Shown: positions 7,771 through 42,167 of the stretch, piece by piece
Layout: each line of letters begins with the position of its first letter
Position numbering within the stretch: the stretch's first letter is position 1
Assembly: GCA_001949185.1 (NCBI GenBank)
Contig: BDGG01000003.1
Span: 4,523,092-4,587,091, forward strand
Direction: 5' to 3'
Origin: Ramazzottius varieornatus
Taxonomy: Eukaryota > Animalia > Tardigrada
DNA: 64,000 bases
Translations under genes and position numbers: made by a program
Notes under the pieces: generated by a model
What the model saw: the letters and a program-made list of their open reading frames with translations, nothing else
What the model was told of the DNA's origin: nothing
The model's database searches: none

Positions 7771-8434
7771 GGGTGAATTACCCTTCAGTAAAACGATATT
7801 TCGATCGAAATACAGTGCGCTGAAATTAACACAGTACTGCACTTTCGAAGTCGGCACGTTTGTCGCTAATGAGCCAGGGTTACTCTGTATCACCGGAAAA
7901 CATCCATAAGTTTTCCCGCCGCACGTGGCAAACTTGGCAGAAGGCAATCATGCCTCCCCATGGTGGAGCGATTGCAACACCATACATGTGGCACTTGTTT
8001 TCAAAAATATTTTTTTGGCGAACCCTGAAATCCTTAGCCTACACGTGTAGCAGTTCGCCAGAGGCGACGTGACTAATGAAAATACCAATGTGCAGGGAAG
8101 TTGCATTAATCAATCTCCTCACACGCTATCGCCGCTTAAATTACAGTAGGTCTTGAGACCGAGTTCCGCCGCGTTTCTCGGTTCTTCGCACGCGACTGTC
8201 TGCATGCGCACAATGCAAAGAACCGATAGAAGATTCATTAAATTATGCAGAACTCTGCAAACATTTGTAGTTAAGTATGCAATATGGAAACGTGAGTGTA
8301 CAACTGACGTTCTGGAATTTCCAAAGAAATGATTTATAAGCATGGTCTTTCAACAACCGCCGGTAGTTCTAGGTTCAAGGTTAACTAGTTTGTTAGTAAT
8401 AGGATCTCTTCAGCCAAATTCGAAAGACGAAAAT

Positions 8435-34863: not shown

Positions 34864-37332
34864 GATGTCGCCGTAAAGCCTGAATCAATGCCGCACGTTT
34901 CATAGACATATTCATACCAAATATTATGTAGTGCACCCGTCTTAGACAAATTCCCAGACAGTACACAAAAGGTCGAGCGACAACAGAAGACCCTTCTTGA
35001 TCTGTCTTTACAGTAATCACAATCAACACATCAATAAAATATTCCAAATTAATTTTTTCATTCAGCTTTGAAAAATACTGTAACTTTCTGTTTACCTGTT
35101 CTGAATCGGCGAACAAAGCGAAGTCTCATACGTCCACTGTGAATCGAAGAAGCGGCTATAATATCATGACACCGTGAACGAAGAAAAGGTTGCACTCAAC
35201 GAAACCTTTGGAGTTGAATATTATTCTTCCCGTATGAGAGAGTTCGCACATTGATTAAGCCATTGCTGGACTGACGGAAATGAGATGATGGCGTTTGGGG
35301 GCTCTGGCGATAATGGCTAGTGTCAGTGGAAGCATAACAGCATCATATTTATGGAGAGGACAGCAGATGTGCGGTAGAGGATCACAGTTGGCTACGCCCT
35401 GTGTCCACTCTCTCGTCGATAGGTTAACAAGGAAGAGAAGCTAACCCCCATCAGAAGAAGTGTACATGTACCGCTCCGCGCGGTCCGAAAGAGAAATTAG
35501 AGCTTGCTTGATCATCCGCAGCGAGCAGCTGGCCCCATCCATGGCCTTCAATTTCGGCAATCATGCATACCCCCAAAATCGTGTTTCGATAATAACACCC
35601 GTGAGCCCCTTCCGACAACTGTCCATTGTTTTAGATCGAAATAACCTCGCGAAAAAAAACGTCATTCGAGGTTTCCGATCTCGGTTTGTTTTCTGGCGTG
35701 CTGGAGAATACTTTTCCTTCTCCAAGTCAGTTTCCCGTCATGGTTCATCAAGTTGTGACTCGTAACTTTAACGGAACAAAATTGTGAACAAAACCCGGAA
35801 GCAACAGGCATGAGCCAAAACTGGTAAGTTGGCCACTCCAGCTTTCGCTCCGGTGACGTCATCGCGTTCGGTATTTACGGGGGACCGACTTAACCTACTT
35901 GGCCCAACCAATTAGTTTCTTGGTTGGCCAGATCCATCCGAATGACTGTTTGTAAAAAGACTGACGAATACTTTATGCGATATTTCGCGAGTTACTAAAG
36001 GTCCCGTTCATTGTTGTTGTGGACTTTGTCGGGTCGGTGGATAAACTGGGAAAGATTTTCGAGCATGGCTTTTTCGCTTTGCTTTGCGTTTATACGTTCT
36101 TGCATGATCACTTTCGGCATGTTACTTGCCCTCTTCCGCTGGGCAGAGAGGCATACGCTATTCGTTCTACATCAGTTGATATCCTTGTCAAAATTGGGCA
36201 CGAAATTAGCCACTTTACAACAAGAAGCCATTGAGCCATTCCGACTGACCCGACAAGGTATACGACCAGGACAAATACACACCCGATATTCTGTCAATAT
36301 GCCCCACTATTCACTACACACCTTATCATGCTAATTAAGTGGCCGTATATGCACTAAAAGTCTAAAGTATCCCTTTTGAATTCCAAAAGTCATAAATCCA
36401 TAACTGACTGCTTTCGTAAAATATGCCTGTCTAGCCTCTCTTTCTGCTCTTCCGACTTTCTCAGTCCGCAGCTTGAATAACCGGTCAATAAAATTCTTTT
36501 CCGGGTCGGAATGTATGGATGACTTTCTTCGAAAACTTGCCTAAAATCAAAACAGTAGCTAAATAGAAAATTACAAGTTAAACGCCTAAGCAGATTGTAA
36601 GGCGGTTTCGGTAATCCTTTCTCTGTTTCTGGCCCTTATTTACACCCGCAAAACCAGTCAATAAGGCGCTCAGAAATCTGTCAGTACATCGGTATCGCAG
36701 ATTCATTGCAGCTGTCAGCGGGACCACCTTCCGTGCTTCGAATGAAGACGCGCCGGTGGTCAAGATGTCATGTAGTGTCAAGATTAGTGAGTTGCCAACA
36801 AACGACCAAAAATGTTCAGCTGAAAAATTGAAAGAGGGTCTTCCGTTAGCCTAGGAGGAACTACATAGTATATGTCCGAAAACGACTTACGCGTCTAAAG
36901 AATGAAAAGGGTGCGCATACTGATATGGGATGTAGACAAATGATCTGAACCAGATCGGTATACAAGTGGCGCACATTATCAATGTCAGCGGCTGGAAGTG
37001 TGCGCCACTTGAGAAACGGCCTGGCTCAGTCATTTGTCCAGGTTTTATATGATGCGTAAGAATCGGATCGACGTATTAGTAATGAAGGAACAGCTTCCTG
37101 TCGAAACTTTCAAGTGTCCGTCAGAACATGAAGTTCATATGTTGAGTCAGATCGGATTACAATCAAATCAGATTTGTTCATCGAGGTTTTTCGGGCCTAA
37201 TTTCCACAATGCTAGACACTGGTTCCAAAAAGAAGCGTTATCGGACTTGTCAGCTTCGAGAGGAAGGTTTTCTCAGAAAGTGCCTCAGGCATCTAGCTGG
37301 AGTCTCATTGTTTCTGTGCTATTGTGTCAAGC

Positions 37333-40231
37333 ATGAAAGTACTAACCTTCGTGTTTCTTTGCCTGCTGTACTCCTGCCAGTGCTTCCTGCTCAATCATCG
37401 TCCTCCGTCATCCGGTGGATCCGTTGCTCGTCAGAGAACTGCATCGAGCCAAGGAGGGTCACAGCAGGATGACGACCGGAAGTGCTGGTGTGACCCACGG
37501 ATTACCACCTACAATCATACGAATGCCATACAAGTTGGTTTCCAATTCCATATTTGTAAAAAATTTGGACGAATACCAGCTAACAGCAACCTTTGTTGTC
37601 TGCTGCAGATCGCATCGGTGAACAACGACGGGACACTAGACTTCTCGGGTACGGAAGACTTACTTACGACCTTACGATCCGAGAACTACGCTGGAACTCG
37701 GAATGTCGCCATCGTCGGTATCGTAGGAGCTCATCGAAGTGGTAAGTTCGCCGCTCACAGTTCCCAAAATCTTCAGTAGACGCCTTCTGTTATTTCAGGA
37801 AAATCCACCTTATTGAACATGCTCCACAGATATATGGCTTGCCAGGTACGGCAAGAGATTCCACATGGAAAGCAAAAAACATTTGGGGCGACGCCAAACG
37901 ATTTCACCCAGATCGTCAACTCAAGTAGTGCACGTTTCCATTGTTATTAACTGAGAGAGCGCGCCACTTAGAAAAACGATTTCAAAAGTCGACAGGGCTG
38001 CTTCGTCAAGCGGTGTGTGCTTTCGGTGTTATTGGCGGGAAGTCTGCGCTACTTGGGAAGACGATCTGGTGAATTGGTTTGACGGCTTGTCATTTTCCGC
38101 CAGTAACGGAAGTGTCCTTTCAGGCGCAACCGAGTTCTAACTGGGAAAACCTTGGGCATAGCGAATGGTTACACGAAGATTCGAACATACCTGGCTGTCC
38201 ACGAACCTTCCAAGTATCGTCTCAGCAGTCTCTGTGCACGAAAGGGGCGTGGATATCGAAGTACCCGTACATATTCGGCGAGCAGAACCTGGCTGTCTAC
38301 TTGATGGACACGCAGGGCTTCTTCGACAACAGCCCTCACAGCAAGACTACCGACTCATCCGTCTTCTACCTGGCCAGTCTTCTGTCCTCCACACTGGTAC
38401 TTTCCGATGTCCTGAAACAGGAAAAAGCCAACTGGACGCATGACTCTTGCAGATTTTCAACGTGAAAGGCCATCTGGAAAAACCCCTTACCGAGCACATT
38501 GGAGCTATTACACTTCATCTTGGACGCGGTGTACATAATGAATCGGACCTGGAATCAAGTAACTGAATAACTTTGGAAAACGATTTTGAAGTATTTTCAA
38601 GCGGACAATTTAGCTTGTCGAGCTTACTAACAATGTATAATAATCAACAGGTATTCCCGCCCAGGGTAAACCTCTTCAGCAACTGCTGTTGCTTATCCGC
38701 GACTATCACCTTCAGGCCAAGAGTGGGAAGGAGTACCTGAGGGAGTACCACAATGGTCATCACCGCGGGGCAGTGGAGCAAATTCGGCAAACGTGGACGG
38801 ACACTGAAGCATTCCTACTGCCGATCGTTGCCTTGAATCCGGAACAGCTGCCTACCCATCCAAACGGTAAGTTGCAGTTTCCTGCTGGAGCACTCAAAGT
38901 CATTGGGTCATTCAAAGTCTTGGACAAGGTTTACTGTGCGATATCCGCCATCAACTTACCATACTTCGACCCAGCTCCGCGGCGCAGGACGCGTCCCATC
39001 CTCCTTTCGGTGTTGCACAGTTCGCAGTCTTGGATGGCACGATCCTCGAAGCTCAGAAGTCATACAGATGACGAAAGGCGAAGCAGGGAGTAATCATGAT
39101 CTCCGAGTTTCCAACAGATGATCGTCGTCGACGATGACGACGAAACTATAAAAACGCATAACGAAAGCGCGCGCCGCGCGAGAAAATCGACAACATTGCA
39201 TTACAGACATTATATATCATGTTATGTCATACGTTTTGATACTGTCCCCGTGTACCGTACAGTGTACACGTACCTGTTCCTTACAAGTTACAGTGCAACC
39301 GGAAATGGCGTTCTTTCACTCTAGATTTAAACCCCGCCTTTGAAACCGCGGTCGCTCAGTTGTTCCACACACACTTTTCAAGAAGGTCCCTTCTCAGAAA
39401 AACCGTTTTCAAACATGTGCTGAAAGGAGTGGACCTTGCAGCGCGGCTGGAGGTTTGTGTTCCACACTAGGTCATGACGGACCGGAAATTGCATTACATC
39501 ACTAACCTTACAGGCCTACCTCAAGCACTTGGGAACCGGAAGGCTGCCTGCTGTTCAAGACCTATACGAAGTTAGTTGTGCTTTCCACTTACCCGATTGT
39601 CTGCACACATCGCAGATCGAGGAACTTCAGTCATTCTTGGTTTGCAGACAGAGTGCAAAATCATTGCGGAGTCAGACGCTGCGGAAGCATTCCGTCACTT
39701 CGAAACCGATCTACGAGCAGAGATCGGCTCGCAATGTTCGCTGGTCCCCGAAGACACAATATGCATCATCACGTTGCACCAGAGACTGATACAAAACCGT
39801 ACGTCAAAATTAAAACGTCGGAACCAGAAGAATAATCACCATCTGTTTGGAAACTCGGAGGAGCTGCTCACGCAGAAGGCTGGCATTTTGCTAGAGCGGA
39901 TATTGTTGGAAAGAGCCAATGCGCGCACTGAGATTGCGCTGGCGAATGTGACAAAAGCACTTTCGGTGAGTTCGGTCGTCGTATTTTACCAACTGGCTGC
40001 CAAACTAAAGAATATGTCTTGCCTTTATAGCATGAAAGGGACGACCACAAGATGGTGCTACAAGCTGTTCAAACAGCTCAACAAAATAACGTCCTGCATT
40101 ATTTAATGAACCATCCATTCACAGAGTTCGTTATAGGAATATTCGCAGCAGTCGTTTCACTGTATCTGCTTTACTCCATAGTGGTATGTCTCATCAACAG
40201 GGCCCGTAAACGGAAGGTTGAAGCACTGTAG
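37333..40231 (+). CDS. Atlastin/GBP-family (GB1/RHD3) GTPase with signal peptide and single C-terminal TM; 10 exons
   Basis: Exons 37333-37533, 37609-37741, 37799-37845, 38124-38396, 38453-38558, 38651-38866, 39325-39452, 39514-39570, 39648-39965, 40031-40231; G1 GAHRSGKS, G2 CTKG.W, G3 LMDTQG, G4 LLIRD. Confidence 0.88.
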
Positions 40232-40806
40232 AAGTTAGAAGAGATAAGAAACGAAGTCTTGTCAAACTTTGAAGTTTGAACATACCTTGAAGTACATAGC
40301 ACAGTGTAAAAATCTAGAACGATCAGAGGTCGCACTCAACTTCTGGAATCTTCACAGTGACGCTAAAACGAAAATCCTTCAAACGAAAACGAAAAATTTG
40401 TAAAACTTTAAATTACAATGTGGAAATCATCGACTATAGACTCAAAACCTTGAGACCGCGCCGTCGAAAAACTCTAAGAGTCCTCGACCTGCATGTGAAA
40501 ACAACAGCGAAAACGCTACGAGTACAGGGAAGAACATTGTGGTCTGCCAAAGGACACTTAAGCTGAACGAGTGCGTCCAATTCGAGCCTTCTTCACAGAC
40601 TAAAGTAAAGAGAACACAGCCGTTAAGGTTTCATACGAAGAAAGGGATAATAAAAGAGAGGTAGGACGTTGGCAGATAATTCCACCCGAACAGTATTTCG
40701 GGTGGCGCACTTTTCCATTATCAGTTACTGACAGGGTGCGCCACTTAGTGAAACGATCTCGAAACTCGACAAGATTGCTTCCTCAAGTGGAGAATAAATT
40801 TTTGTG

Positions 40807-42167
40807 TTATCGGGGGAAGAGTGCGCCACTTGGAAAAACGATCTGGAGAGAATCCATCTGCCGACGTCGCAAACACCCACGTTGGTAGCGGTGTGCTTCT
40901 TCGCGTTGTACAACGGGTCGTTGGCCAAGAATCCGCTCCAAGTCTCGTGGCCACTGTCTGAGTTCCCATTTCCGCCCAACTTCCTCCTCACCCTGTTCCG
41001 AGAAGTACTCTTGTTCCAGCAGGTTCCCCAACAGTACGATCATCGTTAAGTCCAACTGAGCTCCCAAGCTAAGAATCCCTACAATCCCTTGCATATCCTT
41101 GCCGGTCAGAGCATCTAAAGCCGACTGCGCCATCATGACTTCCCCTATGGCCACCAACTCAAGGAACTGCTTTCCGTGGACGAATCGCATAAAACCTTTC
41201 AAGTTCTCTTCCAGCTTGACCTTCTCAATGCGACCTGTGGTCAAATATGTCTGAATGATCTCTCCGACTTCCGGGTCGAAGTCGCTCTTCATGTACCCTT
41301 GGTCGTGCTCTTTGAAGGAAAAGCAGGACGAGAAGAAGCACCGGAAGAACTGAGAGTGTTCCTCGAGGGTGACACGGTCTGTGACGAAGGGAGTGTCCCT
41401 GAATCGAAGCTTGAAAGTGTCGGCTTCATCGGTGGAGGCTTCGGACCTTCGCTCTTTCAGGCGGACTAGCGTGTCAATGGCATTGCGAGTAATCTTCCGC
41501 ATAGCCGGAAGTAGATCCGTAGTCGGTGTACCGACAGGCAGTTGGACTTCCGCTTCGACGACCGTTCCTTCGAAAGTCGATCCAAAACTGAGCGTACCTA
41601 AACAACAGTAAACCTGAAAAAAATGAAGTACAGAACAGAAGTTGGATACTTACGGAAAGTCGGCAAACAAATTCGGCAAGGTCGTTTTCGCAAGCGGCAC
41701 ACATTCCAAGCCATTAGCACTGGCACCATGCGCCACTCAATCAGACTCGACAAGATTGTTTTCCCAAGTAGCGCACGCTTTTGGTCGATACGACCTAGAA
41801 CGTGCGCCAGCTGGGAAAAAATCTTGTCGAGTCTGCTTGCTGAGCTTCCATTTTTCATCTAATTTCAGTGAACGATTTGCTCACCAATGAGTCGACGAGC
41901 GTTGGTCTTTTCGTCCACAGTCTGTTCCAGTTTTGAGTGAATAGTTTCGTACGCGCCAATCTTTAGCTTGTCCAGTGTGAACGGATGTACTCCCCGCCCA
42001 GTGGCGATGATTTCGCCGCTACAGAACGACGGGACGAGCACATTGCGGACTTCGTTCGATTCCTCATCTGCATAAAATATACACACGTAGGATCATTACG
42101 CAGAACGGCAGACTTTAAAAGTTGAGGAACAAGCACATTGCCAGCTGACGATGACGGTTGCCTCCAT
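40807..42167 (-). CDS. BTB/POZ-like domain protein; 3' end uncertain (may splice at ~40880 to an exon ending ~40442)
   Basis: Exons 42167-42137, 42067-41885, 41597-; DTFKLRFRDTPFVTDRVTLEEHSQFFRCFF...FKE....FDPEVGEIIQTYLTTG resembles a BTB domain. Confidence 0.65.
41657..41850. repeat. Palindromic element, double core, intronic
   Basis: Cores at 41692 and 41766 (74-bp period). Confidence 0.85.

What the first reader, a model, noticed from the sequence alone, without database searches (positions are those of the whole stretch)
37333..40231. Atlastin/GBP-type GTPase with apparently inverted topology (signal peptide plus single TM)
Seen: N-terminus MKVLTFVFLCLLYSCQC looks like a cleavable signal peptide. 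G1-G4 are intact (GAHRSGKS with the Arg finger, CTKG, DTQG, RD). There is one hydrophobic stretch, FVIGIFAAVVSLYLLYSIVVCLI, followed by a short basic tail NRARKRKVEAL. Extra cysteines and sequons (NHT, NES, NRT, NVT) lie before the TM. Established: atlastins, GBPs and RHD3/Sey1 have cytosolic GTPase domains, and atlastin anchors by a two-helix hairpin. Inference: this is a type I membrane protein with a dynamin-superfamily GTPase in the lumen or on the cell surface, perhaps for trans-tethering, cell adhesion or fusion, or nucleotide sensing. I know of no described example.
Basis: partly seen in the sequence, partly recalled or inferred. Interest (0 to 1): 0.85.

Follow-up and report, generated by a model that had tools for sequence, protein, structure and literature searches.

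The report
Tardigrade atlastin-like GTPase with signal peptide
This is a real, transcribed tardigrade gene for an atlastin-like GTPase whose sequence predicts that the enzyme faces the inside of the secretory pathway or the cell surface, not the cytosol; that would be unprecedented if shown, but the same predicted layout is already described in amoeba and plant relatives and is unproven here.

Summary
Observation confirmed. Window 37333-40231 (+) holds a 10-exon gene. My exon model equals the deposited 559-aa protein RvY_08075-1 of Ramazzottius varieornatus letter for letter. Eight of nine introns appear as GT..AG joints in RNA-like runs.

The protein has:
- a 13-residue N-terminal hydrophobic run;
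- an intact GBP/atlastin G domain (GAHRSGKS, T166, DTQG, RD);
- an atlastin-like helical stalk;
- one 23-residue C-terminal TM helix and a +4 tail.

It belongs to a clade seen only in tardigrades, with at least 7 proteins in 3 genera. All 7 carry the N-terminal hydrophobic run, an invariant CWC motif and an extra invariant Cys. Cytosolic tardigrade relatives lack all of these. A canonical atlastin sits elsewhere in the genome.

Sequence rules favour a type I topology with the GTPase outside the cytosol. I put this at about 0.55. No tool here can prove it.

Dictyostelium GBP and the plant GBPL2 clade are published with a predicted signal peptide plus C-terminal TM. The Dictyostelium authors concluded that the GTPase faces the cytosol.

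The scan had already flagged a GBP-like gene with a signal peptide on another piece of this genome (s1-790173), presumably the paralogue RvY_01899.

Verdict: new variant of a known kind, moderately interesting.

The parts
37333..37533 (+). Exon 1 (aa 1-67): start codon, N-terminal hydrophobic segment, a low-complexity linker, the CWC motif and sequon N61
   Evidence: Frames. An in-frame stop lies 13 codons upstream. The donor at 37533|37534 is seen as joint 37533->37609 in X4 and X15. Exon 1 of the paralogue likewise ends in ..IQ.
37333..37383 (+). Predicted signal peptide (aa 1-17): K2, then the uncharged run V3-C15, then C-Q-C before a possible cleavage site
   Evidence: Equivalent runs of 13-17 residues occur in all 7 clade members. 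They are absent from the cytosolic relatives.
37483..37491 (+). CWC motif (aa 51-53), invariant in the clade
   Evidence: Invariant columns C51, W52 and C53 in alignment A3. The relatives without the N-terminal segment do not have this stretch at all.
37609..37741 (+). Exon 2 (aa 68-112, first base of codon 112): beta-1 strand and the start of the P-loop (GAHRSG)
   Evidence: Joints 37533->37609 and 37740->37798 (cut +1); translation.
37799..37845 (+). Exon 3: the rest of G1 (G112 K113 S114 T115) and helix 1, ending in the invariant Cys126
   Evidence: Joints. C126 is invariant in the clade and is Q in the cytosolic relatives.
38124..38396 (+). Exon 4 (aa 128-218): a loop with C152, switch I CTKG (T166, 38238-38240) and switch II DTQG (38307-38318)
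   Evidence: Pfam GBP hit on this ORF, 4.8e-8. phmmer against PDB finds GBP5. Joints 37842->38121 (cut +3) and 38395->38452 (cut +1).
38453..38558 (+). Exon 5 (aa 219-254, first base of codon 254)
   Evidence: Joints 38395->38452 and 38558->38651 in X4 and X15. The codon phases are consistent.
38651..38866 (+). Exon 6, including the G4 motif RD (R270 at 38698-38700, D271 at 38701-38703)
   Evidence: X4 contig 9 covers 38121-38395, 38452-38558 and 38651-38868 in one piece. R270 is invariant in the clade.
39325..39452 (+). Exon 7: end of the G domain and start of the middle domain (DLNPAFE...)
   Evidence: The acceptor is inferred from codon phase 1 and from the alignment to Drosophila atlastin 3x1d through aa 384. 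It is identical to the deposited model. This joint is not among those listed.
39514..39570 (+). Exon 8 (19 aa)
   Evidence: Joints 39450->39512 (cut +2) and 39570->39648 in X4 and X15.
39648..39965 (+). Exon 9: helical stalk, with sequons N437 and N487
   Evidence: Joints 39570->39648 and 39964->40030 (cut +1) in X4, X5 and X6.
40031..40231 (+). Exon 10: end of the stalk, TM helix (aa 526-548, 40127-40195), basic tail NRARKRKVEAL (40196-40228) and stop codon
   Evidence: The TM is 23 residues and the tail has net charge +4. An RxR motif follows the TM in this protein and in both H. exemplaris orthologues.

Best explanation
RvY_08075 encodes a member of a tardigrade-specific branch of the GBP/atlastin large-GTPase family that has been rebuilt as a secretory-pathway protein.

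Shown:
- The gene is transcribed and spliced.
- The G domain and the first helical bundle are atlastin-like.
- All nucleotide-binding and catalytic motifs are kept.
- A short N-terminal hydrophobic segment, an invariant CWC motif and a further invariant Cys were added in this branch.
- The atlastin two-helix hairpin is replaced by a single C-terminal TM helix with a short Arg-rich tail.

Inferred:
- The N-terminal segment is a cleavable signal peptide, so the G domain and stalk are translocated. The helix at aa 526-548 then stops transfer, and the 11-residue tail stays in the cytosol (type I).
- The added cysteines form disulfides in the oxidising lumen.
- The RxR-type tail suggests retention in the ER or early secretory pathway rather than the cell surface.
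- The protein most likely still works as atlastin does, by nucleotide-dependent head-to-head dimerisation of G domains. Here that would link molecules on the lumenal (or outer) face, so it would tether or shape membranes from the other side.
- Clade members without a TM (H. exemplaris BV898_17541, the 1116-aa Paramacrobiotus protein) would be soluble lumenal or secreted forms.
For: Identity and fold:
- Pfam GBP scores 79.7 bits against a cut-off of 21.1.
- Atlastins are the best PDB sequence matches, 8.6e-13, with the alignment running into the middle domain.
- Foldseek on the orthologue model gives atlastin-1 at 5.9e-19.
- The Atlas model of this protein has TM-score 0.65 to an atlastin-1 cluster.

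Transcription: GT..AG joints for 8 of 9 introns in two studies. The model is identical to GAU96657.1.

Topology:
- N-terminal uncharged runs of 13-17 residues occur in 7 of 7 clade members, shorter than their own 19-23-residue C-terminal TMs.
- The stretch before the run has a net charge (counting the free N-terminus) of +1 to +3, and it exceeds the charge of the 15 residues after the run in 5 of 7 members.
- The C-terminal tails are net +2 to +4.

Cysteines: C51, C53 and C126 are invariant. C152 or a neighbouring Cys is present in 6 of 7. RvY_01899 lacks it but has CCWC, which keeps the count even. The cytosolic tardigrade relatives (P0015, P0018, P0024) have none of these, no N-terminal extension and no TM.

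Sequons: one after switch II aligns in 4 of 7 members. RvY_01899 has a fifth, one column off. The cytosolic relatives have none there.

Other:
- G1, T166, DTQG and R270 are invariant in the clade, so nucleotide binding is under selection.
- A canonical atlastin is present elsewhere in the genome, so this gene is not the housekeeping ER fusogen.
Against: - No GTP supply to the ER or Golgi lumen or to the cell surface is established (general knowledge), yet the catalytic motifs are conserved.
- The one relative with the same predicted layout that has been tested, Dictyostelium GBP, was reported to face the cytosol (PMC12040241).
- No dedicated signal-peptide or topology predictor could be run; the call rests on my own heuristics.
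- The orthologue He17230 has more positive charge after its hydrophobic run than before it.
- Four conserved Cys could equally form a cytosolic zinc site.
- The CWC segment is poorly modelled (pLDDT about 40), and no coordinates were available to measure Cys distances.
- The transcription start is not mapped, and an out-of-frame ATG lies at 37209.
Confidence: 0.55

Rival explanations
1. The GTPase domain is cytosolic. The N-terminal hydrophobic segment is an uncleaved membrane anchor, inserted N-out or as a shallow hairpin, and the C-terminal helix is a tail anchor. The protein is then an atlastin-like organelle tether or fusogen whose two membrane anchors sit at opposite ends of the chain rather than side by side. 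The CWC motif, C126 and C152 form a zinc site or are acylated.
For: GTP is abundant in the cytosol, and every catalytic motif is conserved. Dictyostelium GBP has the same predicted layout and was reported as ER-anchored with a cytosol-facing GTPase. Plant GBPL2, also predicted to have a signal peptide, is treated as an atlastin counterpart and interacts with nuclear-pore proteins. The TM lies within 11 residues of the C-terminus, as in tail-anchored proteins, and basic tails are common in tail anchors of mitochondria and peroxisomes (general knowledge). A Cys4 cluster is typical of cytosolic zinc sites.
Against: Hydrophobic runs of 13-17 residues at the very N-terminus, preceded by a net positive charge in most members, are what SRP reads as signal peptides, not N-out anchors. 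An N-out insertion would have to carry up to three positive charges across the membrane in Pm1116, Pm299 and Rv01899. The basic C-terminal tail would then lie in the lumen, against the positive-inside rule. In the Dictyostelium assay the N-terminal GFP masks the signal peptide. Also, a single-pass protein cannot have both ends on one side; the accessible C-terminal GFP actually fits a cytosolic tail (my inference). Clade members with no TM at all would be held by a 14-16-residue segment alone.
Confidence: 0.35
2. The protein is translocated as in the best explanation, but the G domain no longer cycles GTP. It is loaded once, or not at all, and serves as a structural or ligand-binding ectodomain, for example binding microbial surfaces as cytosolic GBPs bind LPS.
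For: No lumenal or extracellular GTP pool is known. Two H. exemplaris orthologues have RN in place of the guanine-specifying RD in G4, and BV898_17541 has Lys in place of the arginine finger. This suggests relaxed or altered nucleotide use in part of the clade.
Against: The P-loop GKS, switch I Thr, DTQG and R270 are invariant in all 7 members despite only 27-40% overall identity. That is not expected for a dead enzyme. The window's own protein keeps both RD and the Arg finger.
Confidence: 0.07
3. The signal-peptide-like start is an artefact of the gene model; the true protein begins elsewhere.
For: The transcription start is not mapped. An out-of-frame ATG at 37209 opens an 87-codon ORF across the start. 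A spliced antisense RNA overlaps exon 1, so unstranded contigs over the 5' end are ambiguous.
Against: An in-frame stop lies 13 codons upstream. The hydrophobic start and the invariant CWC share one exon, here and in the paralogue. Seven homologues in three genera, from three annotation pipelines, all begin with such a segment.
Confidence: 0.03

Closest known systems
Atlastins (human ATL1-3, Drosophila atlastin; PDB 3x1d, 3qof, 3q5d)
   Same: They are the best sequence and fold matches. They share the GBP-type G domain with an arginine finger in the P-loop (GxxRxGKS), DTQG and RD, followed by a helical bundle, and they are membrane-anchored near the C-terminus.
   Different: Atlastins have no N-terminal hydrophobic segment, two adjacent TM helices forming a hairpin, and a C-terminal amphipathic helix, with both ends cytosolic. 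This protein has an N-terminal signal-like segment, a CWC motif plus extra conserved Cys, one TM and an 11-residue tail. A canonical atlastin is encoded elsewhere in the same genome.
Dictyostelium discoideum GBP (gnbp, Q54TN9; PMC12040241)
   Same: [quoted passage not shown]
   Different: It is 796 aa with a longer helical domain. Its authors conclude from proteinase K digestion of GFP fusions that the GTPase faces the cytosol. I could not test its relationship to the tardigrade clade because its sequence was not at hand. No CWC motif is reported for it.
Plant GBPL2 clade (AtGBPL2, SlGBP3/4; PMC12489281, PMC12034427)
   Same: [quoted passage not shown] They are found at the ER and tonoplast.
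   Different: They have three TM helices rather than one, and a GBP_C helical domain. Their topology has not been determined, and they are treated as cytosolic atlastin counterparts.
Cytosolic tardigrade 'atlastin-like' proteins (Paramacrobiotus XP_055342674, XP_055350859, XP_055350860)
   Same: They fall in the same well-supported tardigrade clade in the G-domain tree (97/95) and share the GKSTLLN, YL[YF]E and DTQGLFD signatures.
   Different: They have no N-terminal extension, no CWC, Gln in place of C126, no TM, and a charged coiled-coil C-terminus.
Interferon-inducible GBPs (GBP1/2/5)
   Same: They match the same Pfam G domain.
   Different: They are weaker matches than the atlastins. They are soluble, some carry a CaaX lipid anchor, and they have a GBP_C domain. 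This protein has no CaaX, and Pfam finds no GBP_C.

Membership tests
GBP/atlastin large GTPases (Pfam PF02263, GB1/RHD3-type G domain) | Match to the family profile above the curated cut-off | tested here: met
   79.7 bits against a cut-off of 21.1, aa 94-344. Exon 4 alone gives 32.9 bits.
GBP/atlastin large GTPases (Pfam PF02263, GB1/RHD3-type G domain) | G1 GxxxxGKS with an internal arginine finger, switch I Thr, DxxG, and an RD motif in place of NKxD | tested here: met
   GAHRSGKS (R110), T166, DTQG at 189-192 and RD at 270-271. G107, G112-T115, T166, D189-G192 and R270 are invariant in the clade. Arg110 is Lys in BV898_17541.
GBP/atlastin large GTPases (Pfam PF02263, GB1/RHD3-type G domain) | Large G-domain fold followed by a helical domain | tested here: met
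   The orthologue model (pLDDT 68) matches atlastin-1 at E 5.9e-19, TMt up to 0.76. The Atlas model of this protein has TM 0.65 to an atlastin-1 cluster.
GBP/atlastin large GTPases (Pfam PF02263, GB1/RHD3-type G domain) | GTP binding and dimerisation-stimulated hydrolysis | not testable with these tools
   This needs recombinant protein.
Atlastin proper (ER membrane fusogen) | Two closely spaced TM helices forming a hairpin, with both termini cytosolic | tested here: not met
   There is only one hydrophobic segment in the C-terminal part, aa 526-548.
Atlastin proper (ER membrane fusogen) | C-terminal amphipathic helix after the TM region | tested here: not met
   Only 11 residues follow the TM.
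Atlastin proper (ER membrane fusogen) | Cytosolic N-terminus without a signal sequence | tested here: not met
   A hydrophobic run V3-C15 sits at the N-terminus. The true atlastin of this genome is at G000:C4, about 3.507 Mb.
Interferon-type GBPs | GBP_C helical domain (PF02841) and, in some, a CaaX box | tested here: not met
   No PF02841 hit at E <= 0.01. The C-terminus is ..KVEAL.
Type I (signal peptide plus stop-transfer) membrane proteins | Cleavable N-terminal signal peptide | tested here: inconclusive
   By my heuristics there is a 13-residue h-region after K2, with small residues (C-Q-C) behind it, and this pattern is conserved in 7 of 7 homologues. No SignalP or DeepTMHMM was available, and cleavage is not shown.
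Type I (signal peptide plus stop-transfer) membrane proteins | Single TM with the positive flank on the C-terminal (cytosolic) side | tested here: met
   The tail is net +4 and the preceding flank is net -1. Orthologue tails are +3 and +2, and the paralogue tail is +2.
Type I (signal peptide plus stop-transfer) membrane proteins | Ectodomain shown to be lumenal or extracellular (glycosylation, disulfides, protease protection) | not testable with these tools
   Only indirect signs are available: clade-specific invariant Cys and a partly conserved sequon.
GBPs with a predicted signal peptide and C-terminal TM (Dictyostelium GBP, plant GBPL2 clade) | Predicted signal peptide, GBP G domain and C-terminal TM helix or helices | tested here: met
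   Architecture.
GBPs with a predicted signal peptide and C-terminal TM (Dictyostelium GBP, plant GBPL2 clade) | Common descent with those proteins, rather than independent gain of the layout | not tested
The closest relatives of the tardigrade clade are all tardigrade proteins, which hints at an independent origin.

The most novel reading that the evidence does not exclude
Tardigrades evolved a clade of dynamin-superfamily (atlastin-like) GTPases that fold and act on the extracytosolic side of membranes. They would be disulfide-stabilised through the CWC motif, some anchored as type I proteins and some secreted. This implies that usable guanine nucleotide exists in the lumen of the secretory pathway, and it would provide a membrane-tethering or remodelling machine acting from the lumenal or outer face.
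Probability: 0.5. Interest if true: 0.85.

Novelty: new variant of a known kind. Interest (0 to 1): 0.6.

Why it matters
All characterised atlastins, GBPs and Sey1/RHD3 act from the cytosol, where GTP is available. A large GTPase working in the lumen or outside the cell would change two things. It would raise the question of how guanine nucleotides reach that space. It would also add a new way to tether or shape membranes.

Dictyostelium GBP and plant GBPL2 raise the same question, and it is not cleanly settled for either. The tardigrade clade may be the best test case, for three reasons:
- It has clade-specific invariant cysteines.
- It has both soluble and TM-anchored members.
- Close cytosolic relatives are available as built-in controls.

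If the domain proves cytosolic instead, the finding is a modest variant of atlastin anchoring. It would also be a useful warning that signal-peptide predictions in this family mislead.

Tried and rejected
- Frameshift in exon 5. A second reading frame (..LPSTLELLHFILDAV..) looked atlastin-like and suggested a frameshift or pseudogene. The splice phases and the joints 38395->38452 and 38558->38651 show that the other frame is used and the ORF is intact. Rejected.
- Coding gene on the minus strand. CT..AC joints cross the locus, but the spliced antisense RNA has no ATG ORF longer than 56 codons. Rejected as coding.
- The search for homologous proteins with the orthologue and with the clade alignment returned only 3 proteins and 1 protein. 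The word prefilter cut off at 8000 candidates, so this says nothing about the clade's distribution.
- Paper searches for the locus tags, for tardigrade plus atlastin, and for tardigrade plus guanylate-binding found nothing relevant.
- The Atlas search with the C-terminal half gave only sub-threshold GBP_C and Sey1-3HB leads.
- The AlphaFold model of the orthologue does not resolve the CWC segment (pLDDT about 40), and the tool returns no coordinates, so I could not test disulfide against zinc geometry.
- The tree does not resolve whether the signal-bearing proteins are monophyletic relative to the cytosolic trio; that part is a polytomy.
Full report
**What is there**

The window is eukaryotic, with introns of 56-458 bases. 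Its genome, G000, is 55.8 Mb in 200 contigs. Database hits identify it as Ramazzottius varieornatus, a tardigrade.

I derived a 10-exon model on the + strand from three-frame translation and from contigs of public RNA-like runs laid on 35500-41400. The exons are 37333-37533, 37609-37741, 37799-37845, 38124-38396, 38453-38558, 38651-38866, 39325-39452, 39514-39570, 39648-39965 and 40031-40231. All splice sites are GT..AG and all codon phases fit.

Introns 1-5 and 7-9 appear as GT..AG joints in X4 and X15, which come from two studies. Intron 9 also appears in X5 and X6. Intron 6 (38867-39324) is not among the listed joints; seven joints were not shown. I placed it from codon phase and from the atlastin-like sequence that follows it.

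**How the spliced model was searched**

The exon-4 search returned the deposited isoform RvY_08075-2 (P0001). Its cluster holds RvY_08075-1 (P0025, GAU96657.1, 559 aa), which is identical to my join letter for letter. All later whole-protein searches used that database id.

**Check of the observation**

An in-frame stop lies 13 codons before the ATG. Only two segments are hydrophobic enough for a membrane: aa 1-21 and aa 522-551.

**What family it is**

- Pfam GBP (PF02263) matches aa 94-344 at 79.7 bits against a cut-off of 21.1.
- Against solved structures the best sequence matches are atlastins: Drosophila 3x1d at 8.6e-13, with the alignment running to aa 384 in the middle domain. Interferon-type GBPs match more weakly.
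- An AlphaFold model of the full-length H. exemplaris orthologue (pLDDT 68) finds atlastin-1 first, at 5.9e-19.
- The Atlas model of this very protein aligns to an atlastin-1 cluster with TM-score 0.65.

The protein is not an atlastin in the strict sense, because it fails three defining features. It lacks the TM hairpin, the C-terminal amphipathic helix and the plain cytosolic N-terminus. The same genome carries a canonical atlastin at contig C4, about 3.507 Mb, with GAFRKGKS, GFHWRGGSERDTTG and VRDWS.

**The clade**

A phmmer search with exon 4 against 1.84 billion representatives gave only 20 hits at E <= 0.001. All the best ones are tardigrade proteins:
- H. exemplaris BV898_17230, BV898_17229 and BV898_17541;
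- Paramacrobiotus metropolitanus XP_055354347/XP_055336562 and XP_055343784;
- the R. varieornatus paralogue RvY_01899, at locus L003 on contig C1.

Seven of these begin with an uncharged run of 13-17 residues. A variable linker follows, then an invariant C-W-C, and then the G domain.

Three members end in a 23-residue TM plus a basic tail: ours and the two tandem H. exemplaris genes. The RvY_01899 locus also has a terminal ORF with a 19-residue TM and a short basic tail. The deposited models of that gene miss this ORF. BV898_17541 (691 aa) and the 1116-aa Paramacrobiotus protein have the N-terminal segment but no TM.

Three Paramacrobiotus "atlastin-like" proteins belong to the same well-supported tardigrade clade (97/95 in the G-domain tree). 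They start directly at the G domain, have Gln where the others have Cys126, and have no CWC and no TM. They end in charged coiled coil. The tree does not resolve whether the signal-bearing members form one group.

**Topology**

Evidence for a type I layout, with the G domain outside the cytosol:
1. The N-terminal hydrophobic runs are short (13-17 residues) and sit at the extreme N-terminus. In 5 of 7 members the net charge before the run exceeds that of the 15 residues after it. Residues allowed at -3/-1 follow in most members. Their own C-terminal TMs are 19-23 residues.
2. The C-terminal tails are net +2 to +4, and an RxR motif directly follows the TM in ours and in both orthologues. Such motifs act from the cytosolic side (general knowledge).
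3. C51, C53 and C126 are invariant in the signal-bearing members only.
4. A fourth Cys at or next to position 152 is present in 6 of 7. The member that lacks it has CCWC, which keeps the number even.
5. A sequon after switch II aligns in 4 of 7 members. RvY_01899 has one more, a column away. The cytosolic relatives have none there.

Evidence against:
1. The G motifs are invariant across proteins that share only 27-40% identity, so nucleotide use is under selection. No GTP supply on the far side of the membrane is known.
2. Four cysteines could equally be a zinc site.
3. I had no trained signal-peptide predictor and no model coordinates.

**What is already published**

[quoted passage not shown] It localises to the ER. 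In a proteinase K assay both GFP-GBP and GBP-GFP were degraded, and the authors conclude that the GTPase faces the cytosol (PMC12040241).

My reading of that assay is an inference. An N-terminal GFP masks a signal peptide. A single-pass protein cannot have both ends on one side. The accessible C-terminal tag is what a type I protein would show. So I do not think the question is settled even there.

[quoted passage not shown] It is treated as an atlastin counterpart, and its topology has not been tested (PMC12489281; PMC12034427).

I found no paper on the tardigrade genes.

**Verdict**

Type I topology is the best reading of the sequence (about 0.55), and a cytosolic G domain anchored at both ends is a serious rival (about 0.35). 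The layout itself is not new to the family.

What is new is a clade, seen only in tardigrades, that has conserved extra cysteines, both soluble and anchored members, and cytosolic sister proteins. That makes it a good system for settling whether large GTPases can work outside the cytosol.

The scan had already noted a GBP-like gene with a signal peptide on another piece of this genome (s1-790173). It is presumably the paralogue I examined as L003, though I did not check the coordinates.

Noticed in passing
window 36141-39869, minus strand: A spliced antisense RNA crosses most of the gene. CT..AC joints give introns at 36541-37346, 37509-37663, 38412-38490, 38549-38631 and 38882-38959 in X5, X6 and X15. 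The joined antisense sequence has no ATG ORF above 56 codons. It may be a non-coding antisense RNA, or long 5' exons of an upstream minus-strand gene. X5 and X6 show mostly antisense joints, while X4 and X15 show mostly sense joints.
   Followed up: partly
window 37865-38190: One antisense joint, seen only in X5 with a 28-base side, has AT..AC ends on the + strand. That reads GT..AT on the minus strand, which is non-canonical. It may be an artefact.
   Followed up: no
window 38866/38929: The deposited isoform RvY_08075-2 (372 aa) uses an alternative acceptor (AG at 38927-38928). It reads into intron 6 and stops after 47 further codons, giving the signal segment plus G domain with no stalk or TM. 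X4 contig 10 starts at 38928 and runs unbroken to 39450, which fits this form. The antisense exon overlaps the same stretch, so unstranded contigs cannot settle which it is.
   Followed up: partly
window 37209-37472: An out-of-frame ATG 124 bases upstream of the start opens an 87-codon ORF across the start codon. It matters only if transcription starts upstream of 37209, and the transcription start is not mapped.
   Followed up: no
window 40136-41400, minus strand: A convergent neighbour gene has an intron at 40600-40880 (CT..AC) and an ORF at 40807-41502. Its 3' exon reaches back to about 40136, so it overlaps the last exon and 3' end of the GTPase gene. Contigs of X4 and X15 join the two genes.
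   Followed up: no
L003 (G000:C1:5394385-5397666): The paralogue RvY_01899 is deposited only as truncated models of 290 and 328 aa. The locus has further homologous exons and a terminal ORF (L003:3039-3215) with a TM helix and a short basic tail. The true protein is probably a full-length type-I-like member with CCWC.
   Followed up: partly
P0002 and P0021 (H. exemplaris BV898_17230 and BV898_17229); P0009 (BV898_17541): The two tandem orthologues have RN in place of the guanine-specifying RD in G4. BV898_17541 has Lys in place of the P-loop arginine finger. Nucleotide specificity or catalysis may differ within the clade.
   Followed up: no
P0006 (Paramacrobiotus XP_055343784, 1116 aa): This clade member has the signal segment, the CWC motif and the G domain, plus about 600 extra C-terminal residues. 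It has no TM and 13 N-glycosylation sequons (11.6 per 1000 residues). It looks like a large secreted form.
   Followed up: no
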